Shown: positions 4,569 to 58,071 of the stretch, one piece after another | Numbering within the stretch: position 1 is the first letter of the stretch | How the letters are laid out: each line of letters opens with the position of its first letter | Virus record (IMG/VR): IMGVR_UViG_3300042317_001568 | Coordinates: 62,001 to 126,000 of that record | DNA length: 64,000 bases | Direction: 5' to 3' (one strand) | Notes under the pieces: model-generated | The model's database searches: none | What the model saw: the letters and a program-made list of their open reading frames with translations, nothing else | What the model was told of the DNA's origin: nothing | Made by a program: the position numbers and the translations under genes

Positions 4569-4692
4569 CGCATTCTAGAATCTGGAAAATGCGTCGTAAG
4601 TGCTTTGTTCCCTAGCACTTTCGCAATTCGCGAATTTGGAATATGGCGCTTGTCCGCAGTTCGCGAACCGTGGACAGCTGCGCGGACACTGG

Positions 4693-4721
4693 CTAAATAT
4701 GTTGCAAATTTGTGGCATATT
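4693..4721 (+). promoter_or_regulatory. Promoter-like motif CTAAAT-N17-CATATT, copy 1
   Basis: Identical boxes and spacing recur at 5465-5493 and 49079-49107. Confidence 0.75.
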
Positions 4722-4766
4722 TAACGTGGTTCCGATTACCTATGCCCACTAAAAAAGGGAGTTTCT

Positions 4767-5399
4767 GTGCTGGCTGTAAATCCACCAACCCAGATGTTGC
4801 TGCAGTACTTGGAGCATTGTCGCGACAATAGCGACGGCGTGTTCACTGATCCCGCGCTGCATCCGTACTTTATGTCGCTCGCCGTCGCGAAAGCCGTCGG
4901 CATGGACCACACCACTGAAGAGTATAAAGAGCGTGCGTTGTCGACGCTCGCGAATTGGTCGCGGATGCTGTGCGGACAGCTGACCAGCGTATCTATGCGG
5001 GAAATCGCTGACTGCGGCAAGTTCGCGCAGGACAGCGGTGACCGCAAAGGCGAGAAAATGGCCAAAGACCTGCTCGACTCGATGCCGCTGATTCAGGCTG
5101 TTTTCAAGTCGTGGGACGCTGCGGTTGACCACGAGCACATCGCGGAGTGGATTTATGAAGACGGCGTACGTCGGGAGAAGGAAGGGACTGCGCCCCATAT
5201 TTCGAATGAGTTTGTTGCAAAAGAGAAGAAGAAGCTCGACGACCTCTTCGAATTAATTCAAAAGAAGCTCGGAGAGCTCGATGGCTCTGGCCCGCAGCCC
5301 GAGGAGGTCAAATCTCCCGAGCCGGCGCGTCCACCAGTGACGCCGGCCGACATCATGAAGATGCTGTTCGATAACGCCAAGAAGCCGTCTGCGAACTAA
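4767..5399 (+). CDS. Hypothetical protein (cassette A cargo)
   Basis: 210 aa, GTG start after an AAGGGAG RBS; has its own promoter motif and terminator. Confidence 0.7.
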   Translation: MLAVNPPTQMLLQYLEHCRDNSDGVFTDPALHPYFMSLAVAKAVGMDHTTEEYKERALSTLANWSRMLCGQLTSVSMREIADCGKFAQDSGDRKGEKMAKDLLDSMPLIQAVFKSWDAAVDHEHIAEWIYEDGVRREKEGTAPHISNEFVAKEKKKLDDLFELIQKKLGELDGSGPQPEEVKSPEPARPPVTPADIMKMLFDNAKKPSAN

Positions 5400-5412
5400 G
5401 TTCAACGCGGCG

Positions 5413-5457
5413 AGAAGGAGCGGGCACCAAAACCGGTGCTCGCTTTTTCTTAGCTAT
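5413..5457 (+). terminator. Intrinsic terminator followed by TTAGCTAT
   Basis: agaaggagcgggcacc-aaaacc-ggtgctcgctttttct. Confidence 0.75.
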
Positions 5458-5464
5458 CGGTGAC

Positions 5465-5493
5465 CTAAATTAGGCGCGATTTTGCGTCATATT
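5465..5493 (+). promoter_or_regulatory. Promoter-like motif CTAAAT-N17-CATATT, copy 2
   Basis: Repeated motif upstream of the AAA+ gene. Confidence 0.75.
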
Positions 5494-5529
5494 ATTTGTG
5501 TCCCCGTTTCCGCTATGAAGGAGCTTGCG

Positions 5530-6369
5530 ATGAGTATTGCAGACGGAGTGTGCGATCTTCTGCCCGGCTATTTCGCTCGACGAGGCGAGGCCCTGCTGGC
5601 CAGATGGATGCACGAGGCCCGCGGGAAGGAACCGCGCGGTGGTTTACTGGTCGGCCCGCCCGGCACCGGCAAGACGTTCTTTGCCGACGCGTTCGCCCGC
5701 GGCCGCAAGGCCGAGCAGGTGTTTATTCCGTGCCACCCGTGGCTCACGAATGAGGAGCTACATCAGGGTGTGGACATCGGCCGCGTGGCGGTCGGGGTCG
5801 AGCACGCCGACGAGGCGTACATCGACGGCCAGCTGCTGCGCGCTGTGCGCATGTCGCACGACTGCGACGTGGTTATCACGTTGGACGAGGTCGAAAAGGC
5901 TGGGTCGCGGTTTTACCCGCTTATCCTCGACTTCTTGCAGAATGGTCGGGTGCCTGATGCCCGCCACAAGCTGCACAGCGGCAACACGGCCCGGATGTTT
6001 ATCGTCCTGACCGCGAACGAAGAGGTTGACCTGCCCGAGGCCATTAAACGGCGCTGCTTTCGGGTAAACATGGGCTTTCTGCCCGAGCATGTCGAAACCG
6101 ATGTGCTGCGCAAGCAGACAGGCGCACCGGGAGGGGCCTGTCGCATCATTGTGCGCATGGCGAACGCAATCCGGCAGAACGGCGACTCCAAGCCGTCCCT
6201 GCAGGAGCTTCGTCACTTGCTTATGGCGCGAGACCTGTGCGTAAGCACGGACGACGTAGCCACTTTGATCGAAGCGTTTCTTGTAAAAGAAACCAAGGAC
6301 ACGGAGGCCCTTAAACAGGCATTCAGCAAACCCGAAGCTGTACTGTTCGGGGAGTTCAAAAGGAAGTAA
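5530..6369 (+). CDS. AAA+ ATPase, MoxR/AAA_5-like
   Basis: Walker A GPPGTGKT, Walker B ITLDEVEK, sensor I LTAN, Arg finger EAIKRRC; AAGGAG RBS favours ATG 5530. Confidence 0.85.
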   Translation: MSIADGVCDLLPGYFARRGEALLARWMHEARGKEPRGGLLVGPPGTGKTFFADAFARGRKAEQVFIPCHPWLTNEELHQGVDIGRVAVGVEHADEAYIDGQLLRAVRMSHDCDVVITLDEVEKAGSRFYPLILDFLQNGRVPDARHKLHSGNTARMFIVLTANEEVDLPEAIKRRCFRVNMGFLPEHVETDVLRKQTGAPGGACRIIVRMANAIRQNGDSKPSLQELRHLLMARDLCVSTDDVATLIEAFLVKETKDTEALKQAFSKPEAVLFGEFKRK

Positions 6370-6371
6370 CC

Positions 6372-7781
6372 ATGAGCCTGACACTGCGGAAGTTGCAGCG
6401 AATGCTGTCGAAGTCCGTGAAAACTACCCGCGATGTTAGGTTTACGGACCCGCGAGAGCGGGCAGAGTTCGCGGAGTTTATCAAGGGCGTATACGCCGAA
6501 GAATTTACGAGCCCGCTTCTTCGACAAGGGCACGTTCGCGAGAACTGCCCGTGCGGTAATTGCGGCCCCAAAACCGTGAACAACATCACGGCGCTTATTG
6601 ACCGGTTGACAAAGCGGCACGGCCATCGTGCCACACTCAGCCAGTTGCTGGAGCCCAGAAATAAGTCTGGGCGGGCTCAAGGCGGTAGCGGTAAATCAAA
6701 CGGAGCACCGCAGGAGGAGCCCCAGCAGGCACCTTCTGGCGGGTTTGATCCTCCGCCCGCCAAAGATACGGCCGCGGAACCACCGCAGCCCGAGAACTGG
6801 GAACCAACTCCCGCCGCCCAAGAAACTCCAAAACCAAAAACTGAGCGTGAAAGGCTTTCCGACGAGGAAAAAGATTTACGTGCGCGGTTAAAGGAATTGG
6901 AGAAGCAGAAAGCCGCCGCGAAAGCACGCGGCAGTCTGCAAGCTTCGGCGATAGATGTTGTGATAAAGAAAGCCAGAAAGCAGCTGAAGGACGCCCGGAA
7001 ACAGGCATCTAAAATCAGCGGCGTTGCTGGTATTGAGAGTGCTCCGTCGTTGGAGGCTCGACGACGCGCAGCCGGCACACATGGCCGCCTGCGGGTCGTT
7101 CCGCCTCAACTGCGGAACAAAACAGCGGAACTCATTAATAAGTTAGTGCATGAAAGCGGCGCAGCTGGTGACCGCCTCACGCCTATCCCAATTTTGAGTG
7201 CGCGAAAAGTTGTCAAGAGGATGCTTGTCCGGCGTCCACTTGGTAACGCGTTTAAGGAGGACAGCAACGCCGGTCGTCCCGTCACGCTGTTCTTGCCCGA
7301 CGTCTCGCCGTCTTGCGCCCGACAGGCTCAAGCGGCGTGTGACGTCGCTAATGCGGCAGGGTACGCTGGAGTCTCTGGCTCTGACGTACTGGTTTTCCCA
7401 CACTCTAACGGAGAGGTGGAGGAAGATTACGTGCCGTGGTTTAACGGTCGACCCAACTTGGCAAACTTGACGAAAACAGAAGCGCTGTTTTCCGAGATAA
7501 CAAGCGGTCGGTCGCGGTATAACATCCGGATAGTAGTCGCCATTGGCGACCACGACGCCGCGGAGTTGTATCGAGAAATCGCGGCGCTAAAAAAAGTGGT
7601 GCGATTAGTGTGGTTGCACAATATTCCAGTGAGTCGTCGTCGACCCACGGTTGTGCCGTCTGACGCCAATAACTTGTACGGCGAGAATTGGACAGCTGAA
7701 ACACGCAACAAGGTCACAATGATCTACGGTTGCGTTGATCAGGCGTCTATTCTCGGCGGGCTAGAACTGGCTCTTTCTTAA
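6372..7781 (+). CDS. vWA-domain partner of the MoxR-type ATPase
   Basis: MIDAS-like DVSPS and VVAIGD; Pro/Glu/Gly-rich linker; begins 2 nt after the ATPase stop. Confidence 0.65.
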   Translation: MSLTLRKLQRMLSKSVKTTRDVRFTDPRERAEFAEFIKGVYAEEFTSPLLRQGHVRENCPCGNCGPKTVNNITALIDRLTKRHGHRATLSQLLEPRNKSGRAQGGSGKSNGAPQEEPQQAPSGGFDPPPAKDTAAEPPQPENWEPTPAAQETPKPKTERERLSDEEKDLRARLKELEKQKAAAKARGSLQASAIDVVIKKARKQLKDARKQASKISGVAGIESAPSLEARRRAAGTHGRLRVVPPQLRNKTAELINKLVHESGAAGDRLTPIPILSARKVVKRMLVRRPLGNAFKEDSNAGRPVTLFLPDVSPSCARQAQAACDVANAAGYAGVSGSDVLVFPHSNGEVEEDYVPWFNGRPNLANLTKTEALFSEITSGRSRYNIRIVVAIGDHDAAELYREIAALKKVVRLVWLHNIPVSRRRPTVVPSDANNLYGENWTAETRNKVTMIYGCVDQASILGGLELALS

Positions 7782-7836
7782 GCGCGCACCATTAACAGCG
7801 GCACTCCGTTTTACGCCGCAGGAGGTAATTTATGCA

Positions 7837-8411
7837 CTGGCCTAGATAAAGCGATGCCCGGGGTAATCAGCCCGGAGCCTTCGTCTGCAGGGATTAATTG
7901 TTTTCCATGTAGCCGAAATAAAGGGACGACAAACAAACACGGGTTCTTGAAGGCTCGTGAGGACAAAAGTCGTAAACATAGCGGAGCTGTGTCCGACGCT
8001 TTGAGGGGACAATGGCAGGTTAGTCCCACAGGGGAGACACGAGACTTTATTGCGGAACGTCGCCTAATAGCGAAACGCCGCGACATCGTTTCGGTCAAAC
8101 CAGACCGGCCCCGGATTTTGTAACGCGGTTTGCTGCCTAGAAGCGGCCGCGCATATCCCCTGTCGAAAGCGCGCTCGATGGGGGGTCGCTCAATCTGGGA
8201 CTTTTCGTCTGTGCGAAGGTCACGCGGGCCGTCGTGCCCGCGGAATATCACAGAACTATACTAACACGCGCTATTCGTCTAGTCCGGGTAGCGTAGGCTT
8301 TCTCGGTGCGCCTGCTTTAAGCGGTTGCCGCCACGTTCGGCGAGCACTGAGCCACTTCCGCTGAGCAATTGGCGGAGGGGGGAATCGAAATGGCCCCTTT
8401 GGGGCCGTTTC
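7837..8411 (+). ncRNA. Large structured non-coding RNA candidate, family unassigned
   Basis: Long-range closing helix 7837-7853/8269-8287 and at least 10 nested helices; wobble pairs read as G-U on the + strand; no credible CDS. Confidence 0.7.
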
Positions 8412-8420
8412 TTTAGCTAT
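8387..8420 (+). terminator. Intrinsic terminator followed by TTAGCTAT
   Basis: gaaatggcccc-ttt-ggggccgtttc-ttt. Confidence 0.75.
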
Positions 8421-8443
8421 CAGCGCTCCAGTAGAATAATGGT

Positions 8444-9673
8444 ATGACGTACCAAAAAACTTTTCCGTTCCGCCGTGTTTCCGTGGATCACATGGTCCGC
8501 GGAACAACCCGGGTTTGGTGGCAACTTGAGCCGCTATTCCGCGATCCCGGGCCGCATGTCTACCAGCTGCAAGTCAGCAAATCTGGTTTAACAAACTCTT
8601 CAGACTGGGCCGATGTCGGGCCGCCGTTAACAAACGCTTATGTGGCGTATGACTCGGCGTGGCGACTATCCGGATATTCCCTGCTTACGCATTATCGCGT
8701 TAAATTAACAACGCCAACAACTGTCTATGTCTCGCAATCTGCAGGTTGCTTTGGCGAGTTAAACGAGCGCGACTGGGTGTTGTCGCAAGAAATTATCCGT
8801 AAAGAACAGCTACGGCATCAATTTGTGTCGACGCCCGGGTATCTTATTAAGGCTATGCGTTTCGGAAAGCCGTGCCCGCGCTGCCGAGAAAAGCTGACGC
8901 AGGAAGTACTCGACTCGTATTGCCCGGTCTGTAGCGGCACTGGTTTTGAGGTCGGCTATTTTCCGCCGCAGCCGTTGCAATGCTGGGATTTATCTTTACA
9001 GACAATTCAAGAAGAAGGCGATGCGCAGGCCCGCGGGCCCACACGCGACAACGCCGTTGTCCAAGCACGCGTAATTGGTTTTCCGGCTTTAAATAAATAT
9101 GACGTGTGGGTAAACGCCGCCAGCGACGAACGCTGGATAATTGACACAATTCAAGTTGTCGCGGCTATGAGGAATGTGCCGCTGGTGTATCAGGTGCAGT
9201 TAAACCTCGCGCCGTTTACAGACGGTATTTACACATTTGAAGTCGGCGGAGAGTCGCCCACGCGCGACCCGTCGACAGAAGGCCCTACTGTTGGGTGCGG
9301 CGATGTCATCTTAAACCATAACTACAACGGCAACGATCGGTACGCCTACCTGTCTCCGACGGGGTGCCCAATCAGCGGCGCTACGGTATACGTGTTTAAC
9401 AGAAACGTATATGACGTAAACGGCCCGCAAATTGCCCGGACTATGGCGCTCGCAAAAACGAGCACAACCGCAAACGGCCGCTGGGTGCAGGGCGTTAATG
9501 TAAATCCCGGCAACTACGCTATTCTTTATGAAAAGACTGGCGAGTTCGGCCCAGACGTAGATTTTGTAACTGTGGTTGCGCCACCGCCTACCGCATCTGT
9601 TAAAACAGCGACACCCGCAAAGAGCGCCCCGACATGGCCGACGAAAAAAGAAAACGACTTCTGGACCATATAA
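8444..9673 (+). CDS. Putative head-closure/neck protein with CxxC...CxxC insert and C-terminal beta-sandwich
   Basis: CPRC...CPVCSGTGF; lies between the adaptor and tail-completion genes. Confidence 0.55.
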   Translation: MTYQKTFPFRRVSVDHMVRGTTRVWWQLEPLFRDPGPHVYQLQVSKSGLTNSSDWADVGPPLTNAYVAYDSAWRLSGYSLLTHYRVKLTTPTTVYVSQSAGCFGELNERDWVLSQEIIRKEQLRHQFVSTPGYLIKAMRFGKPCPRCREKLTQEVLDSYCPVCSGTGFEVGYFPPQPLQCWDLSLQTIQEEGDAQARGPTRDNAVVQARVIGFPALNKYDVWVNAASDERWIIDTIQVVAAMRNVPLVYQVQLNLAPFTDGIYTFEVGGESPTRDPSTEGPTVGCGDVILNHNYNGNDRYAYLSPTGCPISGATVYVFNRNVYDVNGPQIARTMALAKTSTTANGRWVQGVNVNPGNYAILYEKTGEFGPDVDFVTVVAPPPTASVKTATPAKSAPTWPTKKENDFWTI

Positions 9674-24875: not shown

Positions 24876-26545
24876 TGTCAGCCGACAACTTCGTATACTC
24901 CAAGTTTAAAGTTAAAGTAGATATTGAAGGCACCGTCTTTGAAGACGAGGTTGTCGCGGTTTCGGCTACCTATGGATTAAACGACATTCCAACGGCTACG
25001 GCTGTAATTGCTTGCGGCATAAATATGCGCACGATGCAGCCCTCAAAAATCCACGGCGCGCTCAACACGTTACTGCCGCGCATGAAGGCGACCATCGACG
25101 TCACAATCGAGACACCGTTTGGAAGAACTTGGAAATCACCCTCGGGCACGCACCGAGTTTTTGAAGGTTACTATGTCGGTATAGGAATTCAACGTTCAGA
25201 CACAAACGCAAATTACATTCTGCATTTCGTGCACTGGCTTGATGACTTGAACTGCGGCTCTATCCTAAACGGCAACTGGTATCCGGGCACACCGGCTGAT
25301 ATGGCGCAAACAGCACTGTATGGCTCGCTCGCGAGTATGCCCGGTTCAAACTTGGGGGCGCCTGTTCCTTTTGCGGACCCGTATCTGAATTTGATAACCA
25401 AACCAAACATGGAGAACGACTTATGGGGCAGCGTTTTAAAACCAGTGCTGCTGGGCCTCTCCAACCGAAAGAACCCCATAACGCAAGGAACGTGCCTCGG
25501 TAGTGATAACAACAATAAAATTGTGGAGGACGGTTTAAATAAAATACCAGACGGCGCGCCGACAGCGCTTCCGCTTTCAATGGACCTGCCCAACGTCGAC
25601 GGGCCGCTGCTCAGTGTAAATGCGCAAACTGGCATCTCAAAAATGCTGACAAATGGGTTAGCGTATAACACTATTTGGAGCAAACTGGTCGGCGAACTGG
25701 CGGCGAGCTTCTTGTTTGCGATATCACCCGGAACAACATTTGCAACAGTCATACCGTTTTTTGGCGGATTGCGCATTTCAGCTGACGGCACAGCTTGGCG
25801 CACGATCAGACTAAACGATTACAATTACGCAAATTTTAATTCAAGTCAGCGGCAGCTACTTGAGTCAATCAGCGTGTTTTATCCATTTGTCAGTAACTCC
25901 AATCTCGGCGGCGGGCGAGAAGCCGCGGCGCCGTCGATATCCCAGTGCCCGCCAGTAGCAAAATATCCCACAATCCCGACTAGCCGTAAGGGCGTGATAA
26001 TGGTTCGTGAGCTGCCGACATGGCTACACAATTGCACGTCGGTTGGCGGTTATGCGCACGAAGCCTTGTACCCAGAAGTTGATACACATTCGCCCGGTCA
26101 GGGGTCGTCAACGCCAACCGGCAGTGTGACAATCCGTCCGCCGCTTACAATTGAACGTGAAAAAGGCGTCGCTTCACGTTATTGCGAGCATTGGTATAAA
26201 ACAGAAATTCTAAACCAGCGATACGGCGAATTGTCGGGCAAGTTACGATTTGATATCGCGCCCGGCAGCATGGTTGCCATAGAGGTGCCCCCGCCGCCAC
26301 CGCCAGTAAATCCTTTGTCAAACGGCGGCGAGCCGAATCACATGTACGCAAGCGTCACAAAGGTGTCTTTTGTAATAAACGCGGAACAACATTCTGCCGG
26401 AACTTCGCTCGTGCTAACCAACTTACGCAGCGAGGCAGAGAACAATGACGCGCAGCTAACTAACGAAAAACCGCCGCTGTACCAAACACCGTGGTATGGC
26501 GGCCCACTAACAAAAGAAGCGACCGGAGATAATATCTTGCGATGA
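24875..26545 (+). CDS. Putative baseplate hub protein (gp27/gpD-like)
   Basis: VFEGY near the N-terminus; LRFDIAPG...YASVTKVSF near the C-terminus; position. Confidence 0.55.
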   Translation: MSADNFVYSKFKVKVDIEGTVFEDEVVAVSATYGLNDIPTATAVIACGINMRTMQPSKIHGALNTLLPRMKATIDVTIETPFGRTWKSPSGTHRVFEGYYVGIGIQRSDTNANYILHFVHWLDDLNCGSILNGNWYPGTPADMAQTALYGSLASMPGSNLGAPVPFADPYLNLITKPNMENDLWGSVLKPVLLGLSNRKNPITQGTCLGSDNNNKIVEDGLNKIPDGAPTALPLSMDLPNVDGPLLSVNAQTGISKMLTNGLAYNTIWSKLVGELAASFLFAISPGTTFATVIPFFGGLRISADGTAWRTIRLNDYNYANFNSSQRQLLESISVFYPFVSNSNLGGGREAAAPSISQCPPVAKYPTIPTSRKGVIMVRELPTWLHNCTSVGGYAHEALYPEVDTHSPGQGSSTPTGSVTIRPPLTIEREKGVASRYCEHWYKTEILNQRYGELSGKLRFDIAPGSMVAIEVPPPPPPVNPLSNGGEPNHMYASVTKVSFVINAEQHSAGTSLVLTNLRSEAENNDAQLTNEKPPLYQTPWYGGPLTKEATGDNILR

Positions 26546-27345
26546 GCGCAAACCAAAACTACAAACCGTCTGGGTCTATACTTGGCGATGTTGCGCCGCC
26601 TTTTTCAAAAAACGAAGCGGCTGAAAACGATTTCAACACGCAGTTTAGTTCGTGGTTGGCTAATCCTACGCCAGAAAGCAATGATCAAATACTTACCTCC
26701 GTGCAACCTACAATCGACACTGCGTTGTCGAGTTATGTCGGGCGCACAACGAGCCCAACCATGCGCTCGAAGGCGCGCCTGATGGCGCTGAACGCGCTAA
26801 AAACCTACGATCCGCAACGCGGCAACGTACGCACACACTTGCTGTCGCAAATGCAGGGTCTTCGTCGGCTAAACGCAAAAGAACAAAACATTATCAGTAT
26901 CCCAGAGCAAGTTGGACTTGATTTCCAAAAGCTTGATTCTGCGGAAAACGAGTTACGCGACAAGTTTAATCGGGACCCGTCTGACGACGAGGTCGCAGAT
27001 TACACGGGCTTGTCTGTTAAACGCATTCGTAAAATTAGGGGTTTCCATCAGCCGCTTTCAGAGGGCATGACAGCCGCAGTAGCCGATAGCGAGAATTCAC
27101 CCGCAGAAGTAGCCAGCACCTTACCGGGCGCGACCTCGTCAGCAGATGCTTGGTTAGGTTTTGTGTACGACGACCTAAGCCCGACCGACAAGCTAATCAT
27201 GGACATGACATTGGGTCGCAACGGCCGACGTCGGGCGTCTACGCAAGATATCGCTAAACGCTTGAACATTACTCCCGGGGCGGTCAGTCAGCGGGCGGCA
27301 AAAATTCAAGTGATGCTCGACAAACGATACGATCACAACTTTTAA
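26542..27345 (+). CDS. RNA polymerase sigma factor, sigma-70 family (group 3-like)
   Basis: Region 2 ALKTYDPQRG; region 3 FNRDPSDDEVADYTGLS; region 4 HTH STQDIAKRLNITPGAVSQ. Confidence 0.85.
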   Translation: MSANQNYKPSGSILGDVAPPFSKNEAAENDFNTQFSSWLANPTPESNDQILTSVQPTIDTALSSYVGRTTSPTMRSKARLMALNALKTYDPQRGNVRTHLLSQMQGLRRLNAKEQNIISIPEQVGLDFQKLDSAENELRDKFNRDPSDDEVADYTGLSVKRIRKIRGFHQPLSEGMTAAVADSENSPAEVASTLPGATSSADAWLGFVYDDLSPTDKLIMDMTLGRNGRRRASTQDIAKRLNITPGAVSQRAAKIQVMLDKRYDHNF

Positions 27346-40235: not shown

Positions 40236-41252
40236 ATGTCGCGTCCCGGCTTTTACAACGACAACGAGTACCGCGCCTATCCGTTTATTTACAACTCGGC
40301 TGCGGACGCGTTGCCGACTAACGTTATTGTTGACGCCGGTTTCATTATGGGGTTGGACGCAGATTACGATGAGACGACAGATTACATTTGGTTAGAGCGC
40401 GTGCAGCGTATATGCGTTACCGGGCGCACAGACTTCAAATTTGTGTTTCGGGTCACGGGCGTTTCGCAACCGATTATTTTTGCGCGGGCCGCGCCAAATG
40501 TTGGCACGCCGCCAACTATTGAGTGGGTGACCGAGTACGCCGAATCAGCCGACGACGCCGCGAGCTGCGGAACAGACCCTGTCTGGTCTGGGTTTATGGT
40601 CACCGGCCGCCTAACCGAATTGGCGGCGAGCATGGTGGAACAGTTCGGGGCGCCAAACACAGACAGTGGCGCGGTAACACACGAGTTAGTGTTTGCGAAT
40701 AACGCGTACAGGATTGAACCGGCACGCGTGCAGAATTTACGCAAAGCCTATCTTCGCAGTGTCAGCGTAGGCAATTATCGCCGCGTAACTGTGCCGGTGT
40801 GCAACAACAGCGGCGCAAGCGTTTTGCCGAATAAAACAGTTATCGTAAACAAAGAATGCATGCACGGCAATTTGCTGTTTCGCGAAGGATACAACTGCCA
40901 GATTATTCAAAAGACGCGCAACAACAGTATTAACATCGGCGCAGTAAAGGGCGGCGGCACAGCAGAAGACAGCGCCCTGTGCGAGAACTCGGGCGAAATC
41001 CCCTTTACGCCGAACGAGGAAAAACCGCTAGAGGTCGCGGCGGCAAACGGCAAACCCGAAGTGCGCAGCAAATTTTTGAGCGGCGGGCCTGCGTGCAAAG
41101 ACTTGATATTCACGATTAACGGAATCGGGGGCGGTAATGTAAACTTAATAGGCGGCGTTAACTTCAGCATGCGCGGGCCAGACGAAGGCGAAACAGCCAC
41201 GCTCCACTTGAACATGAATCAGAATATTCAAGGTGGCTGCGATGGTAATTGA
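40236..41252 (+). CDS. Tail protein, paralog family
   Basis: FYNDN.YRAYPF; [10 protein letters not shown]. Confidence 0.55.
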
Positions 41253-44200
41253 CAATTTATTCGCCGGTTCATCGTGCAATATTCGCGAGGTAGAGCGCGT
41301 TAATTTCAGCTTCGTTGCCGACGCTGATTGCCAGATAGCGCCCTTACCGCTGCCAATCTTTGAGTGCGAGTTGCCGCCCGTGCCGCCTGAACCGGACACG
41401 GAAGTCGGCGTAATTTGTCCTGTTTTCGGGCCGGTAGTTGGCGAAATCCGCGTGGGATATCAGCCGCCCACCAACAATTGCTTTATTAAACGCCTTCCCG
41501 AAGCAAAGCTCAGCATAACTAAAACAGCGACAGACCCGTGTAACTACGAACTGGCGCTGGACATCAACGTACCAATCCCGCCGCCGCCGTGCCCGACAAT
41601 TCGCTCTGGGCCTTCGCAGATTGAGGTCGGCTACGATTCTTGCGTATCGCCGCGGGCCGAGCTAATTGTAGACAAAACGATTATTCCGGCGACGTGCACC
41701 ACACCGGAGCGCTGCGAGTTCGATATCGGTTTTGATATAGCCATACCAATTCCGCGCCCGCCATGCCCCGTAATCAGGCGCGGCACATTCACTGTCGATA
41801 CTGGGTTTACAGGTTCGAGCTGTCTGGCCGGCAAAAAAAATTCTTTTAAGGTCACACAGTCAACGATTCCGGGCGACTGTGACACGCCAGAGACGTGCCA
41901 ATACGTCTTCGACCTAGAAATTGTGGTGCCGGTTCCAAAGCAACCGTGTCCAATCTTAAACAGAAAGCAATTCACGGTTTCTTCCGCGTACACATCAGCT
42001 GCGAGCCCGTGCGCGCCCAGTACGTTTTCTATTACCTCTATACCAATTCCGGGAGACAATTGCCGGACAGCAGACACATGCCGCTATGACTTTGAATTAG
42101 CGATTAATGTACCGATACCCCCGCCGCCGTGCCCAGTCATTCGCCGGCGTGTATTTGACGTATCGGTCGGCTACGAAGGCGAAGACTGCGTAGCCGGCGA
42201 CAACTCATTTGAAGTAGTCGCGGACCCGATACCGAGCACGGGCTGTGGCGATCCGGGGCGCTGCGAGTTTGACGTTGATTTAGTTCTAAAGATTCCTATC
42301 CCGAAACCACCGTGTCCAATTCTTAGACAGGTAAGCGACCCGAACGATTTCGTATCTGTTGGATACGACGGCTGTCCGGATGTTGTCGGCAAATCATCGT
42401 ATTTTGCAATTACTCCGGTTACAACAACTACGACCGATGGTTGCAGAACGGTAAAAACGTGCGGCTGGGAAGTCGACCTGCGAATTGTCGTGCCCATCCC
42501 TAAGCCGCCGTGTGTCGTGCTGAGCAAAAGCCCAGACCGCTCGACGTTTGTGTATGTGGGCTACGAAGACTCGCCGTGCGTCAAGGATAAGCAAAGCCAG
42601 TTCAGTATTCGAAAGACCGAGTACAACGACACCGACGGCTGCACCACCGTCAAGCGCTGCGAATGGGAGTTCGACATTGAGATTGTCGTGCCTATCCCCA
42701 AGCCGCCTTGCGTAAATCTTAAGCGCAAGAAAACCGGCAACTTTGTCTACGTTGGCTACGAGGGCTGCACGAATGTCGCGGGCAAGACGTCCTACTTCGC
42801 TATTACGCCCGTAGTGTCGGCACCCACTGCCGGCTGCAATACAGTACCAAAATGCGAATGGGAATTTGACATTGAGATTGTCGTACCGATCCCGAAGCCG
42901 CCGTGTGTCAGTCTTAAACGTAAAACGTCCGGCGACTTTGTTTCCGTCGGCTACGCGGGCTGTGAAAAGGTCGCTGGCAAGACATCGAAATTTGCGATCA
43001 CGCCTGTCATTAGCACTGAGACAGATGGCTGCACTACAGTAAAGAAATGCGAATGGGAATTCGACATCGAGATTGTCGTACCAATCCCCAAACCGCCGTG
43101 CGTAAGCCTAAAGCGCAAAACATCGGGCGATTTCGTTTCCGTCGGCTACGAAGGCTGCGAAAAAGTTGTCGGCAAAACATCCAAGTTTGCGATTACGCCC
43201 GTCATCAGTACTGAGACAGACGGTTGCACTACGGTAAAAAAATGCGAATGGGAGTTCGACATCGAAGTTGTCGTTCCTATTCCTAAACCCCCGTGTGTCA
43301 GCCTTAAGCGCAAAACATCCGGCACGTTTGTGTACGTCGGCTATCAGGGTCAGACGCCAGTCGCGGGGCGCAGTTCGCGCTTTGCAATAACGCCGGTCAC
43401 CACTACAGAAACAGACGGCTGCACGACGGTAAAAAAATGCGAATGGGAATTCGACATTGAGATTGTCGTACCGATCCCTGAGCCGCCATGCGTTACGCTG
43501 AAACGTAAAACCACGGACAACTTTGTCTCCGTCGGCTACGAGGGCTGTGAAAAAGTTGTTGGCAAAACATCGCGCTTCACCATTACGCCTATCACCGGCA
43601 CTACGACGGTCAATGGCGTGACGCTGAAAAAGTGCGAATGGGAATTCGACATTGAGATTGTCGTTCCGATCCCGAAACCGCCATGCGTTAGCCTCAAGCG
43701 CAAGACGTCTGGAGACTTTGTTTCCGTCGGCTACGAAGGTTGTTCGACGGTTGCGGGTAAGTCGTCCAAATTTGCGATTACACAAGTCACGACCACAACG
43801 CAAGATACCTGCAACACGGTAAAGAAGTGCGAATGGGAATTTGACATTGAGATTGTCGTCCCGATCCCGAAGCCGCCGTGCGTAACGCTGACGAACAAAA
43901 AATCTGGCGGGTTCGTGACGGTCGGTTACGAGGGTTCGTCTTGCGTAACCGGCAAATCGAGCAAATTCACTATCACAAAAGTCGCGGCAACTCCGTCTAC
44001 GTCGTGCACCAAGCCAGATGATTGTGAGTGGGAATTCGATATCGACGTCATCGTACCGATACCGAAACCAAAATGCCCGAAGCTGCAGACCAAAGCTACA
44101 AACAAAATCAAGTCGACTTACGAGGACTCACAAACCCCGTTCCCCGGCACAGCTAAGTTTCAGATCATTCCGACCACAAACACGTCGGCGGCATGCAAAA

Positions 44201-47200
44201 CGCCTGACGAGTGCCAGTTTGATTTCGACATTGACATTGATTTTAAGCTTCCTCGCCCACCGTGCCCGCAGATTACTATTCGGCGCCAAACGGTGCGAGC
44301 CGACTACGAAGTGCCGAGCACGCAGCTTTATTTTAATTCGATTACGCAGCATCAGCTGAACACCGGCACCAACCGCCCGCCGCAGTGTATCTTCAATGTT
44401 GACTTTGATCTGCAAATCAAAATACCGAAACCACCGTGCATAAAAATTCAGGTGGGCACAATCGATTTGAGGAAAGTCGATATCGACCGAGAACCGGTGT
44501 TTCGGTTAACGCCGCGCCAGAACTGCAACGCCGGGTACTTCGACAACACGTTCTTAGACTTCACTATTGAGTGGCCGTGGTGCAAGCCGTATTTCGTATA
44601 CGACATATCCGGCAGTTACTCCGGTGGCCCTCCCGAATCGCAGTCTTTAAGCGCAAAATACTACGACCCCGTCGACGGCGATGGCTGTGGCGGCGACGAC
44701 AAAACCAAGCTGTACGTCAAACAAGACCAAAGCGATAAGTGCAAGTTTTGGATATCCGCGGAGACAAAGCTCAACATCGCGTCGAGTGTGTACAAAGTAA
44801 AAGAGGTTGAAATCACTGGGTGTGACACCGACAACTTCGGCTACGGTGGCTACGCAAACGACACCTATTGCGCGATCAGAGAAGTACAGATTGAAGAAGA
44901 GATAAAATCAGGCGGCGCGGGCTGCAATACCTCACCCAAGGTTGTCGAGCAAAAAGTAAAAATTGTAACCAACCCGTTGAAGGCCGGTAAAGTCACGGTT
45001 ACGCCAGACAGTGTCGCCAGCGGTGAATTGTCAATTGTCGACAAAGACACGTACTCTGAGTTAACGCTTACGCTTGATTTCAACACGGTTGAATGCAGCA
45101 GCGGGGCGAGTGCTGGCGGTGGCGGTGGTGGTGGTGGCGGCTACGGCGGCAGCAGCGGAAGCGGCGGAAGTTCTGGCACGGTCTTTTGTTACACCGGCCC
45201 TAGCGGCGCCACGGGTCCCCGCGGTCCGACGGGTCCGTGCGGCCCAACCGGCGCGACAGGACCAACTGGCCCGCGCGGATTCACGGGCGTTACTGGTCCG
45301 CCGGGTCTGACTGGCCCGTCTGGTCCTTCAGGCCCGGCCGGCCCGCTACCGCTCATCAGCGCATTTGTTATGCAGCCGCTTGTAACCCCGCCGGCGCAAC
45401 CATACTTAAACGTCTCGGGTACACCAGAAGCACCAATATTAGAGTTTTATCTGCAGCGCGCACCGTACGTAACCAAAGGAAACGTACAGATTGTCGCGCC
45501 GGACATCGACCCTGATATTACCGCGCAGGGCGGCGGCGCGCAGGGCGACCTAACGCTCGACTTCAAACTACCGCGCGCGGCAAAAATAAATGTAAAACCA
45601 GTCACGGTATTAACGCCAGATACTGTGCCTACAGCTGTCGGGCAACCCAACGCCGGCGACGTAGATTTAACGTTCTCATTACCGCGCGCAGCAACTGTTA
45701 CAAAAGGAGATTTCGAGGTCCTTGATCCCGATCAAGACCCAGAAGTCGATTTCCAGATTCAAGCCGGCGACGTCACCGTTGACTTCAAGCTTCCCAGAGC
45801 AGCCGAGATCAACGTTCAACCAACCACGGTTGTAGCGCCTAACGTCGATCCATCGGTATCACAAACAACCACAGCCGGTGACGTAGATTTGACGTTTAGT
45901 CTGCCGCGGGCGCCAGAGTTTACAGTTGCCGCCACCAATATCGGGGGTGCGGGCGATGACCCTGCTGTAGAGTTAGCGCAAACCGGCGGCGGCGATTACG
46001 AATTTACTTTCACCCTGCCGGGCGCTAAGTCTCTTGCGATTGGTACTACGACGACACTAGACCCCGTAAACGACCCGACTGTTGCGCTTATCGCAAACGG
46101 CGACGACAGCGGCTACGACATTAACTTCTCGTTGCCGCGAGCAATAGCGTTCACGTCAAACTCGTTTGCCATAGACCCGATAGATGACCCGATTGTGATG
46201 GTGAGTACGGACCCGTTCAGCGGCGATAAGCATCTCGGGTTTAATTTACCGCGAGCTCGCCGCGTGGATGTTGGCAACGTGATTTCAATCGGCCTCACCG
46301 GGCCGACAGGTCCAAATAATGCGTACATTTGCTCCGAGCTGGATATCACATGCGCGGCGAAGGTTACCGCCCGAGAAGATACGGCCGGCGACGTATTGCT
46401 CGACTTTGAAATTCCTTTAGGCCCAACCGGCCCGGCGGGACCGTCTGGTCCGACAGGGCCGACAGGACCTACCGGCGCCACAGGCCCGGATGGCCCGCAA
46501 GGTATAGAAGGCCCGCTTGGGCCGACGGGACCGTCTGGTCCGACAGGGCCTACAGGGCCAACTGGAGCTACCGGGGTCGCTGGGCCGCAAGGCGTAGAAG
46601 GGCCTCTCGGGCCGTCTGGTCCGACAGGGCCGACAGGGCCTACAGGGCCTTCAGGGCCACGCGGCTTTCAGGGTGTAACGGGCCTGTCAGGCCCAAGCGG
46701 TCCGAAGGGGCCCACGGGCCCAACGGGCGCTACAGGGCCAGCAGGGCCCTCTGGACCGCGTGGTTTAGGCGAAACAGGGCCGACAGGGCCGACGGGCGCT
46801 ACAGGGCCGAGCGGGCCGCAAGGGCCTATTGGGCCGCAGGGTCCTGAAGGTGTTCAAGGTCCGCAGGGTCCAGAAGGACCGCAAGGTCAAATAGGTAACG
46901 CCGGGCCGCAGGGGGCGCAGGGTCCTCCGGGTGTTCAAGGCGCCGACGGTCCAGAAGGCCCACAAGGACCGCTTGGGCCGTCTGGACCAGCAGGCCCTTC
47001 CGGACCAACTGGCCCGAGCGGCCCATTAGGCCCGACAGGTCCGATAGGTCCTTGCGGACCGCCGGGCTCGCCGGGGCCGCAGGGCGCGACAGGCCCCACA
47101 GGGCCAGCAGGGCCGAGCACATTAACTGAAGCGTTATTGCAACAAATTATTGCGGCTGTAAACACCAACCCCGCACTGCGGCTTGCAATAAAAAACGCAG

Positions 47201-47211
47201 CGCTAGCGTGA
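41233..47211 (+). CDS. Giant fibre protein: ~16 Cys-rich repeats, nine LPRA repeats, two collagen-like G-P-T/S tracts
   Basis: Repeats are directly visible in the translation. Confidence 0.8.
42658..44075 (+). repeat. Coding tandem repeat with a 195-nt (65-aa) period
   Basis: CEWEFDI codons start at 42658, 42853, 43048, 43243, 43438, 43633, 43828 and 44023. Confidence 0.9.
46420..47117 (+). repeat. Collagen-like Gly-X-Y coding repeat (~75 triplets)
   Basis: Uninterrupted or near-uninterrupted [12 protein letters not shown] run. Confidence 0.9.
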
Positions 47212-48759: not shown

Positions 48760-49065
48760 ATGCGCGACCTTGTTGTTATTGAAGACAGCCTAATCTTTTC
48801 AATGCTGAACGACACGGCGTTTACAAACACTATTCCGTGCTTGTTCGGCAAAAAAGACATTTTTTTAACAAACGCTACTGGCGGTTGCAGCAGCTGCTCA
48901 CAAAAACGGCAAGAACGACGACGCGCCGAGATCGCGCGAATAAAGGCGTGTCTCGCGGGGCTGAGCACAGAAAAGCGCGCTGAGCTTAAAAAACTCTTCA
49001 ACACGCAAAAAATTCGGATCGTGTACACGACCGCCGGCAATCAGACCGCGCAAGTCACATTTTAG
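48760..49065 (+). CDS. Hypothetical protein with CxxC motif
   Basis: ATG 2 nt after the FN3 gene stop; CSSC. Confidence 0.55.
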   Translation: MRDLVVIEDSLIFSMLNDTAFTNTIPCLFGKKDIFLTNATGGCSSCSQKRQERRRAEIARIKACLAGLSTEKRAELKKLFNTQKIRIVYTTAGNQTAQVTF

Positions 49066-49078
49066 GGGAAAAGACGCG

Positions 49079-49107
49079 CTAAATTTTTCGCAATTTCGCG
49101 GCATATT
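49079..49107 (+). promoter_or_regulatory. Promoter-like motif CTAAAT-N17-CATATT, copy 3
   Basis: Repeated motif. Confidence 0.75.
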
Positions 49108-49154
49108 AGATGCCCCGCTATCTCATTATCAGCGGGTCACTCTGGAGACGCGAA

Positions 49155-49601
49155 ATGGCTGCAACTGCGACTATAAGGGATTTTGTCGTATCTGAAGACG
49201 TGGTAGAACACGTCAAGGCGCGTATCAAACACCATCTGCGACATCGGCAGAAGCGGGGTGTACCGAAGACGAGTCAGACGCTGGTGGACCGCGTCATGGC
49301 TAAATACGACGCGGCGTTTCCAGACAAGTTCTGGCATCGCGTCGGATTGTGGTACACCAAGATCATGGAACGGACGCTTCCAAAAATGCGCGGGTTTGCC
49401 GCCACTGATTTCTTTGAGATTGTTGCGGCGCACCTCCGCAACAACGAAGACTACGATGGTTTTCAGGACCCACCTGACGACATCGAACAGCGCGTCCAAC
49501 GTGACGCATATGTCGCCTGCACTGCGGGCATTAGGGACTACACTTATGACGATGACATCGACACGTTCGATGATGACGGACCTAGCCACGATTCGTGGTA
49601 A
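49155..49601 (+). CDS. Hypothetical protein (cassette C cargo)
   Basis: GGAG RBS before ATG 49155; acidic C-terminal tail. Confidence 0.65.
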   Translation: MAATATIRDFVVSEDVVEHVKARIKHHLRHRQKRGVPKTSQTLVDRVMAKYDAAFPDKFWHRVGLWYTKIMERTLPKMRGFAATDFFEIVAAHLRNNEDYDGFQDPPDDIEQRVQRDAYVACTAGIRDYTYDDDIDTFDDDGPSHDSW

Positions 49602-49702
49602 AACATGCACGGCTATGCAGTCGTAACAATCTACGCAGATTGTTTCGACTCGTAGTCGTGCTAAATTTTGCTATTGCCACTTTCCCTTAGCTATTACAAC
49701 TT

Positions 49703-50188
49703 ATGGCCAAAAAAATTGACAAAACGTTGCAGGTACAACCGACCCCGAAAACCGCGTATTCGATGCCGGAACCAAATGATGACATGGCCGCCTTCGGTTG
49801 GGACTTGTCAAAAATTCGGTTTCCGGCGCCCGGCTTAAAACGCGGCGACGTCTGGTCCGGCCCGCCGATCTGGAGCGTGCCAATTAACATCGAGCTCGTA
49901 AATAAGTACGGCCCCGATATTCAGTTCCTCAACCCCCGATTTCTGCAACTCATCCTCGACGCATCGCCCGAAGTGCAAGAAGCAGTAGCTAAAGCAAAAG
50001 CGGCGCGATATACAGCCACGGCTATCGCGGAACTGCAGAAAACTATTATGACTGTCTTCAAAACGATGATTATCCCAAACATCGTCGAGCGCTTTGAAAA
50101 CATATCGGACGGCGTAGCGCAATTCTACGCCGCCCGATTAGCGTGGACGACAAAGTACGGAGAAGACCAATCAGAAGACGTCAAGTAA
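49703..50188 (+). CDS. Hypothetical protein
   Basis: 161-aa ORF. Confidence 0.55.
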   Translation: MAKKIDKTLQVQPTPKTAYSMPEPNDDMAAFGWDLSKIRFPAPGLKRGDVWSGPPIWSVPINIELVNKYGPDIQFLNPRFLQLILDASPEVQEAVAKAKAARYTATAIAELQKTIMTVFKTMIIPNIVERFENISDGVAQFYAARLAWTTKYGEDQSEDVK

Positions 50189-51603: not shown

Positions 51604-51822
51604 ATGTTGGTGCTGGCGCGCAAAAAGAATGAAGAAATCATCATCGGAAGCGGCCCCGACGCCATCGTGTTAAAGGTGATGGAGCTAACGCAAGATCGCG
51701 TGCGGCTCGGCATCACGGCGCCGGCTACCGTCAACATACTGCGAAAAGAACTCATTAAACTTGGAGAAAAAGAAAATGGGCTGGAACGATCGGATGATCG
51801 ACAATCCATACCCGCCGTATGA
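51604..51822 (+). CDS. csrA: Carbon storage regulator CsrA (RNA-binding translational regulator)
   Basis: MLVLARKKNEEIIIG...VRLGITAP..V.ILRKE matches the CsrA signature. Confidence 0.9.
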   Translation: MLVLARKKNEEIIIGSGPDAIVLKVMELTQDRVRLGITAPATVNILRKELIKLGEKENGLERSDDRQSIPAV

Positions 51823-57998: not shown

Positions 57999-58071
57999 GC
58001 CGGTGTAGCTCAGTTGGTAGAGCCGCTGATTTGTAATCAGCAGGTCGTCGGTTCGAGTCCGACCGCCGGCT
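57999..58071 (+). tRNA. trnT: tRNA-Thr(UGU), CCA not encoded
   Basis: GCCGGTG/CGCCGGC acceptor stem; D arm GCTC-AGTTGGTA-GAGC; anticodon arm GCTGA-TTTGTAA-TCAGC; T arm GTCGG-TTCGAGT-CCGAC. Confidence 0.95.

What the first reader, a model, noticed from the sequence alone, without database searches (positions are those of the whole stretch)
49078..49694. Third copy of the same cassette architecture, 41 kb away
Seen: gCTAAAT-N17-CATATT (49079-49107), a leader hairpin (tgccccgct/agcgggtca), a single 148-aa orphan gene, a 55-nt imperfect hairpin (49607-49661, with G-U pairs, one bulged C and one mismatch), then TTAGCTAT (49687-49694). This independent recurrence of both boundary motifs supports the cassette model. 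Inference: the promoter is read by the phage sigma factor or a host-specific sigma.
Basis: partly seen in the sequence, partly recalled or inferred. Interest (0 to 1): 0.65.

Follow-up and report, generated by a model that had tools for sequence, protein, structure and literature searches.

The report
Conserved phage promoter–gene–hairpin transcription unit
This is a real, self-contained transcription unit (a phage-specific promoter, a 5' hairpin, one small conserved gene of unknown function and a very large hairpin) in an uncultured 205-kb lake phage; its signals are the phage's general transcription punctuation, not the borders of a mobile cassette.

Summary
CTAAAT-N17-CATATT occurs 3 times in the window (0.01 expected) and 11-12 times in the 205-kb genome, always on the + strand. 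It also sits upstream of the homologous gene in all 25 related loci examined.

The "cassette" reading is only partly right.
- The 148-aa gene is not an orphan insert. It holds the same slot, between the tail-fibre genes and a 161-aa gene, in 25 of 26 related loci, down to about 22% identity.
- The promoter motif is one generic promoter class of this phage clade.
- TTAGCTAT belongs to the next gene. It lies 2-12 nt before that gene's ATG, which has no Shine-Dalgarno sequence in any relative.
- By contrast, the segment holding the first two copies (window 4569-8443) is absent from one relative.

Outside the window the phage encodes its own multisubunit RNA polymerase (a fused beta/beta'-N protein plus beta'-C). 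It has one sigma factor, whose DNA-binding helices do not vary across the clade. In the distant relative Arash, these proteins are found in virions.

Best reading: an early-type promoter read through the phage sigma. No RNA data exist to test this. The protein is a helical bundle with no known relative.

The parts
49079..49084 (+). -35-like hexamer CTAAAT of promoter class P1
   Evidence: Invariant in 23/23 aligned related loci. Part of a motif with 3 window copies against 0.01 expected.
49085..49101 (+). 17-nt spacer with an A/T-rich centre and a GG just before the -10 hexamer
   Evidence: Spacer length is fixed at 17 in all exact genome copies and all relatives. Its sequence varies except for the central A-rich stretch and GCGG.
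49102..49107 (+). -10-like hexamer CATATT (A at position 2, T at position 6)
   Evidence: CATAT is invariant in 23/23 relatives; the last base is T or A.
49111..49112 (+). Conserved TG; predicted transcription start at about 49112 (inferred, not measured)
   Evidence: N3-T(G/A) follows the -10 hexamer in most genome copies (9 of 11) and in all relatives aligned. No RNA data exist.
49111..49139 (+). 5' leader stem-loop (core stem 49114-49119 with 49131-49136)
   Evidence: Folds. One compensatory C-G to U-A change among near relatives. All 23 related leaders fold here with different stems, mean z -2.7.
49144..49147 (+). Shine-Dalgarno GGAG, 7 nt before the ATG
   Evidence: Read directly. Conserved in near relatives.
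49155..49601 (+). Gene for a 148-aa helical protein with an acidic C-terminal tail; clade-specific family of unknown function
   Evidence: Third-codon-position substitutions dominate (for example 16/15/56 against L001). Homologues are found only in this phage clade. No Pfam, PHROG, NCBIfam, PDB or fold match. AF2 model has pLDDT 77 and five helices.
49607..49661 (+). 24-bp imperfect hairpin: transcript 3' end, terminator or processing element
   Evidence: -34.4 kcal/mol, z -7.9. Relatives give -35 to -63 kcal/mol for their single hairpins (one locus, L051, folds as two stacked hairpins, -107 kcal/mol), with many compensatory changes. The consensus terminator scan did not call it, because the T-run is short and offset.
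49666..49695 (+). 30-nt block, near-invariant in close relatives, holding a T-run and two GCTAT repeats 20 nt apart
   Evidence: Identical or with 1-2 changes in L001, L002, L005 and L006, although third codon positions of the flanking genes are up to 55% changed.
49687..49694 (+). TTAGCTAT = core of motif class P2; the start signal of the next gene, not the end of this unit
   Evidence: TTTTCCTTAG(C/A/G)TAT lies 2-12 nt before the next gene's ATG in all 23 loci, never with an SD. About 12-14 genome copies, each after a hairpin plus T-run.
49703..50188 (+). Next gene (161 aa, starts MAKK), no SD; probably leaderless or with a very short leader
   Evidence: N-terminus and ATG are conserved. The distance from P2 is 2-12 nt.
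4693..4721 (+). P1 copy heading a 210-aa gene (first 'cassette')
   Evidence: Present in L029 and L030. The whole segment is absent from L031.
5450..5493 (+). Terminator T-run + P2 (5450-5457) + P1 (5465-5493) heading an AAA+ ATPase operon (second 'cassette')
8413..8443 (+). P2 copy at the head of the tail-gene module; TAGAAT lies 11 nt downstream and the ATG 6 nt after that
   Evidence: Conserved in L029 and L030.
26542..27345 (+). The only sigma-70-family gene of the phage (267 aa, regions 3 and 4)
   Evidence: It is 62-86% identical over the best 120 of more than 369 matching clusters, with an invariant region 4.2 helix-turn-helix.

Best explanation
The locus is an autonomous transcription unit of a 205-kb uncultured freshwater phage.

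Transcription starts at a bipartite, sigma-70-family-type promoter: -35 CTAAAT, a 17-bp spacer, -10 CATATT, and a predicted start near G49112. This promoter belongs to a class of about a dozen copies that mostly head small genes of unknown function, which suggests early or host-takeover genes.

The most likely reader is the phage's own sigma factor (window 26542-27345). It would work with the phage-encoded multisubunit RNA polymerase or with the host core. By analogy with phage Arash, the enzyme may be delivered in the virion.

The transcript begins with a stem-loop placed 0-4 nt from its 5' end. The likely role is a 5'-end stabiliser or a protein-binding site. An SD and the 148-aa helical protein follow.

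A 24-bp hairpin ends or protects the 3' end of this RNA, and of any read-through from the tail-fibre operon upstream.

The T-rich TTAGCTAT element that follows is a separate start signal. It restarts expression at the next gene, which has no SD, probably as a leaderless or near-leaderless mRNA.

Shown: the motifs, their genome-wide recurrence, strand bias, deep conservation, hairpin covariation, synteny, and the presence of phage RNAP and sigma genes.

Inferred: the transcription start, which polymerase and sigma act, early timing, the roles of the hairpins, and the protein's function.
For: Motif statistics:
- P1 occurs 3 times in the window against 0.01 expected.
- The genome holds 11-12 sites, all on the + strand, scoring 30-47 bits against at most 14.5 in shuffles.
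- In 218 kb of related DNA there are 27 exact copies, all on the sense strand, one per locus (none in L031), against 0.05 expected.

Conservation:
- The hexamers are invariant in 23/23 aligned relatives, although the encoded protein falls to 21-34% identity.
- Third codon positions of the gene are up to 55% changed.

Hairpins:
- The leader hairpin is present in 23/23 relatives with different stems, and in most of the 11 genome copies.
- The 3' hairpin scores z -7 to -9 in five lineages, with compensatory changes.

P2:
- It sits next to the ATG of a gene without an SD in all loci.
- It also heads the tail module.

Polymerase and sigma:
- The phage encodes a 1467-aa beta + beta'-N fusion and a 636-aa beta'-C.
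- It has a single sigma gene, whose region 4.2 and region-2-like segment are invariant across the clade.
- In Arash, which shares the fused RNAP at 32% identity over 97% of its length, beta, beta' and sigma are abundant in virion mass spectrometry (PMC10585845).

The first 20 kb of the genome shows no excess of TTGACA/TATAAT-type promoters (11 found, 11.5 expected).
Against: - There is no transcript evidence. All 24 public runs that hold this DNA are DNA metagenomes.
- The host is unknown, so CTAAAT/CATATT could be the consensus of its housekeeping sigma.
- The sigma gene lies inside the tail-gene module. The early-promoter idea therefore requires the sigma to be packaged, which is shown only for a very distant relative.
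- Arash does not carry this motif, so no cross-host test was possible.
- The 3' hairpin is followed by only four T's, and these begin 5 nt after the stem. The simple terminator scan does not call it.
- Pfam does not detect a sigma region 2.
Confidence: 0.55

Rival explanations
1. P1 is an ordinary early promoter read by the unknown host's own RNA polymerase with its housekeeping or another host sigma. The phage sigma and RNAP serve other genes, for instance those behind TTAGCTAT.
For: - The architecture is classical: two hexamers, a 17-bp spacer, and A2 and T6 in the -10 hexamer.
- P1 heads small early-type genes, tRNAs and the tmRNA region.
- The sigma gene lies among late structural genes.
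- Some near-200-kb relatives were binned with Alphaproteobacteria (names). From memory, the promoter consensus of that group is not identical to that of E. coli.
Against: - The -35 hexamer matches TTGACA at only 2 of 6 positions.
- The hexamers are invariant across a clade whose proteins fall to about 22-30% identity. That fits a phage-borne recognition factor at least as well.
- Relatives package RNAP and sigma in the virion.
Confidence: 0.27
2. This is sigma appropriation. The -10 CATATT is read by the host primary sigma, while the CTAAAT box is bound by a phage-coded activator that replaces -35 recognition. This is T4 MotA/AsiA-type middle-promoter logic.
For: - The -10 hexamer resembles a host element, whereas the -35 does not.
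- At window 8414 the other motif (P2) lies 11 nt upstream of a TAGAAT hexamer, which is a MotA-box-like spacing.
Against: - The spacing of CTAAAT to the -10 hexamer is exactly the canonical 17 bp expected for sigma region 4, not the 11-13 bp of MotA boxes.
- No MotA or AsiA homologue turned up among the proteins scanned, but only part of the genome was scanned.
Confidence: 0.08
3. This is a mobile or moron-type gene cassette. The gene with its own promoter and terminator was inserted between structural genes, and the two motifs are its borders.
For: - The unit is self-contained and sits between tail-fibre genes and other genes.
- The segment carrying the first two P1 units (window 4569-8443) really is absent from relative L031. 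There, the orthologues of the flanking genes (70% and 63% identical) abut each other.
Against: - For this copy, a homologue is present in the same slot in 25 of 26 loci, including very distant ones.
- GC content is not deviant.
- P1 and P2 occur independently elsewhere.
- TTAGCTAT tracks the next gene's ATG.
- No repeats of a recombination-site type flank the unit.
Confidence: 0.06
4. The hairpins act at the RNA-processing level rather than in stability or termination. The 24-bp hairpin would be an RNase III site that separates upstream and downstream messages. The leader hairpin, with its conserved TATCAGC arm, would be the binding site of a phage regulator.
For: - The stem spans more than two helical turns and has small irregularities, as in T7 RNase III sites (from memory).
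- The T-run is short and offset.
- TATCAGC recurs in the 3' arm of many leaders and next to P2.
Against: - TATCAGC is only mildly over-represented: 18 on the + strand against 11.4 expected.
- Several clade members have quite different leader arms.
- In relatives the T-run after the big hairpin is 5-6 nt long.
Confidence: 0.2

Closest known systems
Phage-sigma-dependent promoter classes (B. subtilis phage SPO1 gp28 and gp33/34; T4 gp55 late promoters), recalled from general knowledge
   Same: A phage-coded sigma-70-family protein is associated with a set of conserved, non-host-like promoter hexamers repeated through the genome. The SPO1 late -10 (GATATT) even resembles CATATT.
   Different: - Those sigmas use the host core enzyme, whereas this phage also encodes beta and beta' homologues.
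- T4 gp55 needs only a -10 element, whereas this promoter has both hexamers at 17 bp.
- The assignment of P1 to the sigma is untested.
Multisubunit RNA polymerases of phiKZ-like and AR9-like jumbo phages and their promoters (PMC7598289, PMC7824862, PMC13282480)
   Same: This is a jumbo-size phage carrying beta/beta'-like polymerase genes. In the relative Arash the polymerase is found in virions, as with the phiKZ virion RNAP.
   Different: - The reviews state that RNAP-encoding jumbo phages have no sigma homologue, and that sigma-encoding ones lack an RNAP.
- Here both are present, in one copy each.
- Beta is fused to beta'-N rather than split.
- The promoter is a classical bipartite one rather than a short AT-rich motif at the start site.
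Morons of lambdoid phages (a gene with its own promoter and terminator between conserved genes)
   Same: One small gene has its own promoter-like and terminator-like signals and is embedded next to structural genes.
   Different: - It is conserved in position in 25 of 26 related loci.
- Its composition is not deviant.
- Its signals are the phage's general ones.
5'-terminal stabilising stem-loops (E. coli ompA leader type) and intergenic hairpins of T7-like early regions
   Same: A stem-loop starts within a few nt of the predicted 5' end. A long irregular hairpin lies between transcription units.
   Different: The position relative to the true 5' end is inferred only. No family membership is possible, and Rfam finds nothing.

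Membership tests
Sigma-70-family bipartite promoter | Two conserved hexamers separated by 17 +/- 1 bp, upstream of a gene and on its strand | tested here: met
   Fixed 17-bp spacing, all copies on the + strand, all upstream of genes.
Sigma-70-family bipartite promoter | -10 hexamer with A at position 2 and T at position 6 | tested here: met
   CATATT; CATAT is invariant in 23/23 relatives.
Sigma-70-family bipartite promoter | Transcription start 5-9 nt downstream of the -10 hexamer | not testable with these tools
   No RNA run holds this DNA. A conserved TG 4-5 nt downstream is the only hint.
Housekeeping (E. coli-type) sigma-70 consensus promoter | -35 close to TTGACA | tested here: not met
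   CTAAAT matches 2 of 6 positions. The consensus scan does not call this site.
Sigma-28 / FliA / SigD class promoter (TAAA-N15-GCCGATAA, from memory) | -10 element GCCGATAA with a CGA core | tested here: not met
   The -35 shares TAAA, but GGCATATT lacks the CGA core in either register (read).
Intrinsic (Rho-independent) terminator | Stable G+C-containing stem-loop | tested here: met
   -34.4 kcal/mol, z -7.9; -35 to -40 kcal/mol in four near relatives.
Intrinsic (Rho-independent) terminator | A run of at least 5 U directly (0-2 nt) after the stem | tested here: inconclusive
   The window has 4 T's starting 5 nt after the stem, and the scan did not call it. Relatives have 4-6 T's starting 3-6 nt after the stem.
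Moron / mobile gene cassette | Presence or absence differs among otherwise syntenic relatives | tested here: not met
   A homologue is present in the same slot in 25 of 26 loci. The feature is met for window 4569-8443 instead, which is absent from L031.
Moron / mobile gene cassette | Own promoter and terminator | tested here: inconclusive
   Sequence signals are present and conserved. Their activity was not measured.
N4-type hairpin promoter | Short DNA hairpin (5-7 bp stem, 3-nt loop) upstream of the start site, recognised by a single-subunit virion RNAP | tested here: not met
   The hairpin lies downstream of the -10 hexamer and has 8-11-nt loops. No T7/N4-type RNAP domain was found (although that search's control did not ring).
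T4 MotA-type middle promoter (considered for the TTAGCTAT element) | Activator box about 12 bp upstream of a sigma-70 -10 hexamer | tested here: inconclusive
   TAGAAT/TAAAAT lies 11 nt after the box at window 8414 and in L029 and L030. No -10-like hexamer follows the box at 49688, where the ATG comes after 8 nt.

The most novel reading that the evidence does not exclude
CTAAAT-N17-CATATT is the cognate promoter of a phage-encoded holoenzyme that combines a cellular-type multisubunit RNA polymerase (a fused beta/beta'-N protein plus beta'-C) with a genuine sigma-70-family factor. The enzyme is delivered in the virion to transcribe about a dozen immediate-early units, of which this 148-aa gene is one. 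Recent reviews say this combination does not occur in jumbo phages. If correct, the element would be the first promoter consensus for it.
Probability: 0.33. Interest if true: 0.75.

Novelty: new member of a known kind. Interest (0 to 1): 0.5.

Why it matters
The unit itself (promoter, leader hairpin, gene, hairpin) is ordinary phage gene organisation.

Its value is as a defined, deeply conserved promoter element for a large and abundant clade of uncultured ~200-kb freshwater phages. More than 260 related structural-protein clusters and more than 369 sigma clusters were found.

These phages carry both a multisubunit RNA polymerase and a sigma factor. One short template (window about 49040-49200) plus one 267-aa protein is enough for a direct test of what the phage sigma recognises, and whether it works with the phage polymerase or the host one.

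The analysis also corrects the cassette idea. The same signals flank conserved core units and truly accessory ones alike, so they cannot be used to call insertions.

Tried and rejected
- **Transcript evidence.** The look-up of sequencing runs found 24 holders, all lake or freshwater DNA metagenomes kept as contigs, and no RNA.
- **Known RNA families.** Nothing was found for 48900-49800 even at E <= 1.
- **Protein function.**
  - No Pfam, PHROGs or NCBIfam hit.
  - No PDB sequence match.
  - The first AF2 model was unusable (pLDDT 51). The second was good in the core (pLDDT 77).
  - Foldseek PDB and BFVD gave nothing at E <= 0.001.
  - VIA wide gave a best Z of 5.1, below the noise level stated for helical bundles.
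  - The ESM Atlas gave nothing usable.
- **Cross-host test of the motif.** Phage Arash (Salmonella) has no CTAAAT-N17-CATATT beyond chance and no comparable dyad. It has its own long 5-copy repeat, so the test was uninformative.
- **Nucleotide similarity.** There was none to any deposited phage.
- **Records behind L001 and L002.** These could not be searched.
- **Models rejected.** The sigma-28, N4-hairpin-promoter and integron/moron models were considered and rejected (see the membership tests).
- **Minus-strand ORF 49137-49610.** It is open only in this phage and broken in relatives, so it is spurious.

Full report
**What is there**

The window is bases 62001-126000 of a single 205,010-bp virus contig. 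IMG/VR classes it as linear and CheckV as 100% complete. Its DNA is found only in lake and freshwater metagenomes.

- gCTAAAT at 49078-49084, a 17-nt spacer, and CATATT at 49102-49107.
- A small hairpin with core stem 49114-49119 and 49131-49136.
- GGAG at 49144-49147.
- An ORF from ATG 49155 to the stop at 49601, giving 148 aa.
- A 24-bp imperfect hairpin at exactly 49607-49661 (-34.4 kcal/mol, z -7.9, no shuffle as stable).
- Four T's, then TTAGCTAT at 49687-49694, then the ATG of the next gene at 49703.

**More than chance**

- CTAAAT-N15-19-CATATT has 3 matches in the window against 0.01 expected.
- In the whole genome there are 7 exact and about 4 one-mismatch copies. All are on the + strand.
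- A weight matrix built from them gives 11-12 sites scoring 30-47 bits. Shuffled genomes reach at most 14.5 bits.
- The full consensus is CTAAAT, a spacer with an A-rich centre, GG, CATAT(T/C), three variable bases, then TG.
- TTAGCTAT alone is only borderline (3 matches against 0.96 expected).
- Every good copy follows a hairpin and a T-run. A matrix finds about 12-14 such sites with the form T-run + TA(G)CTAT + (C/T)AGCGC.
- In four places this element lies 7-10 nt upstream of a CTAAAT promoter. In others it stands directly before a gene.

I call the two motif classes P1 and P2.

**The gene**

It has no Pfam, PHROGs or NCBIfam match. The word search finds six proteins at 59-100% identity. 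An exhaustive profile search of 1.84 billion representatives finds seven.

It is a real gene on the + strand. Against four relatives, substitutions pile up at third codon positions, for example 16/15/56. The 157-aa ORF on the opposite strand is broken in the relatives.

A model built with 25 homologues is confident in its core (pLDDT 77) and shows five helices followed by a disordered acidic tail. No significant match was found by PDB sequence search, Foldseek against PDB or BFVD, VIA-align against 48,161 chains (best Z 5.1, below the stated noise for helical bundles), or the ESM Atlas. Its function is unknown.

Its own strong promoter, small size, acidic tail and restriction to this phage clade fit a host-interaction protein. 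That is a guess.

**Synteny and conservation: the key test**

All contigs carrying close homologues show the same gene order. The order is: giant collagen-repeat fibre, a 127-aa gene, a Big_1 protein, an fn3 protein, a 100-aa gene, this gene, a 161-aa gene, and further on a CsrA homologue. Distant homologues (E about 1e-11) sit in the same slot.

Using the downstream 161-aa gene as an anchor, I fetched 20 IMG/VR loci.
- A profile of the target family finds a homologue immediately upstream of the anchor in 25 of 26 loci in total (E 4e-5 to 7e-87). Identity to the window protein falls to 21-34%.
- Upstream of every one lies CTAAAT-N17-CATAT(T/A), with at most one mismatch.
- In 218 kb of related DNA the exact pattern occurs 27 times. 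All copies are on the sense strand, one per locus (none in L031), against 0.05 expected.
- In an alignment of 23 such regions, both hexamers, the GG before the -10 hexamer and the T after it are invariant. The flanks and most of the spacer vary.

The mobile-cassette reading fails for this copy. The functional-signal reading is strongly supported.

**The hairpins**

The leader hairpin is weak in isolation (-9.4 kcal/mol). Near relatives keep it through a C-G to U-A exchange. All 23 related leaders fold into a hairpin starting 0-4 nt after the conserved TG. These hairpins have quite different stem sequences between sub-clades (-8 to -18 kcal/mol, mean z -2.7). Most other P1 copies in the genome have a hairpin here too, and some are followed by T-runs.

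The 3' hairpin is maintained at -35 to -63 kcal/mol in almost every locus (L051 has two stacked hairpins, -107 kcal/mol), with many compensatory changes. Its T-run is short and offset in the window, with four T's starting 5 nt after the stem, and it was not called by the simple scan. In relatives the T-run is 4-6 T's. It is therefore a terminator-like element, or a 3'-end or processing element. Which of these it is cannot be settled here. Rfam has nothing for either hairpin.

**TTAGCTAT belongs to the next gene**

In close relatives a 30-nt block (window 49666-49695) is nearly invariant. Across all 23 loci the core TTTTCCTTAG(C/A/G)TAT is kept and lies 2-12 nt, mostly 7-9 nt, before the ATG of the anchor gene. 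That gene never has an SD, and its N-terminus (MAKK) is conserved. This points to a start signal giving a leaderless or very short-leader mRNA.

The P2 copy at window 8414 stands at the head of the tail module: a sheath-like protein, a DUF2345 hub-like protein, baseplate wedge, the sigma gene and the fibre. There, a TAGAAT hexamer lies 11 nt downstream and the ATG 6 nt after that. This arrangement is conserved in L029 and L030.

No single model fits all P2 sites. I leave P2 as a second, unexplained promoter-like class.

**A real accessory segment**

In relative L031, the orthologue of window gene 3582-4568 (70% identical) is directly followed by the orthologue of gene 8444-9673. The segment carrying the first two P1 units is therefore missing there. 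Those units are a 210-aa gene, and an AAA+ ATPase followed by a 469-aa gene. The segment is present in L029 and L030. The same signals thus flank both accessory and conserved units.

**Who reads P1?**

Outside the window the phage encodes two polymerase proteins:
- A 1467-aa protein joining the beta domains (Rpb2_2, _3, _6) to the N-terminal beta' domains (Rpb1_1, _2).
- A 636-aa beta' C-terminal protein (Rpb1_5).

No alpha homologue was found, and there is only one sigma-like gene, the one in the window. That sigma is 62-86% identical over the best 120 of more than 369 matching clusters. Its region 4.2 helix-turn-helix and a region-2-like segment are invariant in 15 diverse members, which matches the invariance of the two hexamers.

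The nearest cultured phages share the fused polymerase at 31-32% identity over 97% of its length. They are Salmonella phage Arash and Vibrio phages D69, D148 and D181. In Arash virions, beta was the most abundant protein by spectrum count, and beta' and sigma were also detected (PMC10585845).

Two reviews state that RNAP-encoding jumbo phages lack sigma homologues and that sigma-encoding ones lack an RNAP (PMC7824862; PMC13282480). This clade does not fit that division.

The first 20 kb of the genome, where seven P1 sites cluster among small genes, tRNAs and a tmRNA, shows no excess of TTGACA/TATAAT-type promoters.

Together this makes the phage sigma the most likely reader of P1. The enzyme may act early if it is delivered in the virion. 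It remains an inference for these reasons:
- No RNA data exist.
- The host is unknown.
- Arash lacks the motif, so the cross-host test failed.
- The -35 TAAA resemblance to sigma-28 promoters does not extend to the -10 element.

**Verdict**

The cassette interpretation is partly supported: it is a transcription unit, not a mobile cassette, and the right-hand 'border' belongs to the neighbouring gene. The sigma idea is plausible and now better grounded, but untested.

Confidence by claim:
- About 0.85 that P1 is a functional promoter-type signal.
- About 0.5 that the phage sigma reads it.
- About 0.33 for the full virion-holoenzyme scenario.

The element is a new member of a known kind, namely phage-specific sigma-type promoters and promoter/terminator-bounded units. 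It has added value as a handle on an undescribed phage transcription system.

Noticed in passing
outside the window: L017:7108-11511 and L017:12474-14384 (genome 47108-51511 and 52474-54384): The phage encodes a multisubunit RNA polymerase. One protein of 1467 aa fuses beta to the N-terminal half of beta', and a second of 636 aa is the beta' C-terminal part. This sits alongside a true sigma-70-family gene (window 26542-27345). Two reviews say RNAP-encoding jumbo phages lack sigma homologues.
   Followed up: partly
window 4569-8443: The segment with the first two CTAAAT-type units is absent from relative L031, where the flanking orthologues abut. The units are a 210-aa gene, and an AAA+ ATPase plus a 469-aa gene. 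The segment is present in L029 and L030.
   Followed up: yes
window 49687-49705 and 8413-8446: The genes at 49703 and 8444 have no Shine-Dalgarno sequence. Each starts a few nt after the TTAGCTAT element. At 8444 a TAGAAT hexamer ends 6 nt before the ATG. Both are probably leaderless or near-leaderless mRNAs, and the arrangement is conserved in relatives.
   Followed up: partly
L007:9922-10271, L007:5273-5343, L007:5531-9461; window 57999-58071: The phage carries a tmRNA (tag GAHAPALAA), a Pistol ribozyme match (58 bits against a gathering score of 34.5), six tRNAs in the left arm, and tRNA-Thr in the window.
   Followed up: no
L007:16307-17100 (genome coordinates): Two tandem CTAAAT-type promoters (16307 and 16360) are followed by about 700 nt without a convincing + strand ORF. 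This is a candidate non-coding RNA. No Rfam match was found even at E <= 1.
   Followed up: partly
window 51604-51822: A 72-aa CsrA homologue (PF02599, E 1e-17) lies four genes downstream. It is conserved in that position in every relative whose fetched stretch reaches that position.
   Followed up: no
window 49126-49133 and P2 sites such as 8417-8426: The heptamer TATCAGC occurs both in the 3' arm of many leader hairpins and directly after TAGC in the TTAGCTAT element. Genome-wide it is only mildly enriched (18 on the + strand against 11.4 expected).
   Followed up: partly
window 41233-47211: A 1992-aa protein with collagen triple-helix repeats (Pfam E 5e-33), presumably the tail fibre. It lies just upstream of small Big_1 and fn3 proteins.
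   Followed up: no
OQ632216.1 (phage Arash), minus strand at about 26724, 66471, 100227, 138574 and 173348: Arash has five near-identical copies of an AT-rich element of about 100 nt. It lacks the CTAAAT-N17-CATATT motif. This may be its own promoter class.
   Followed up: no
window 49137-49610, minus strand: A 157-aa ORF antisense to the gene is open only in this phage and is interrupted in all four close relatives. It is spurious.
   Followed up: yes
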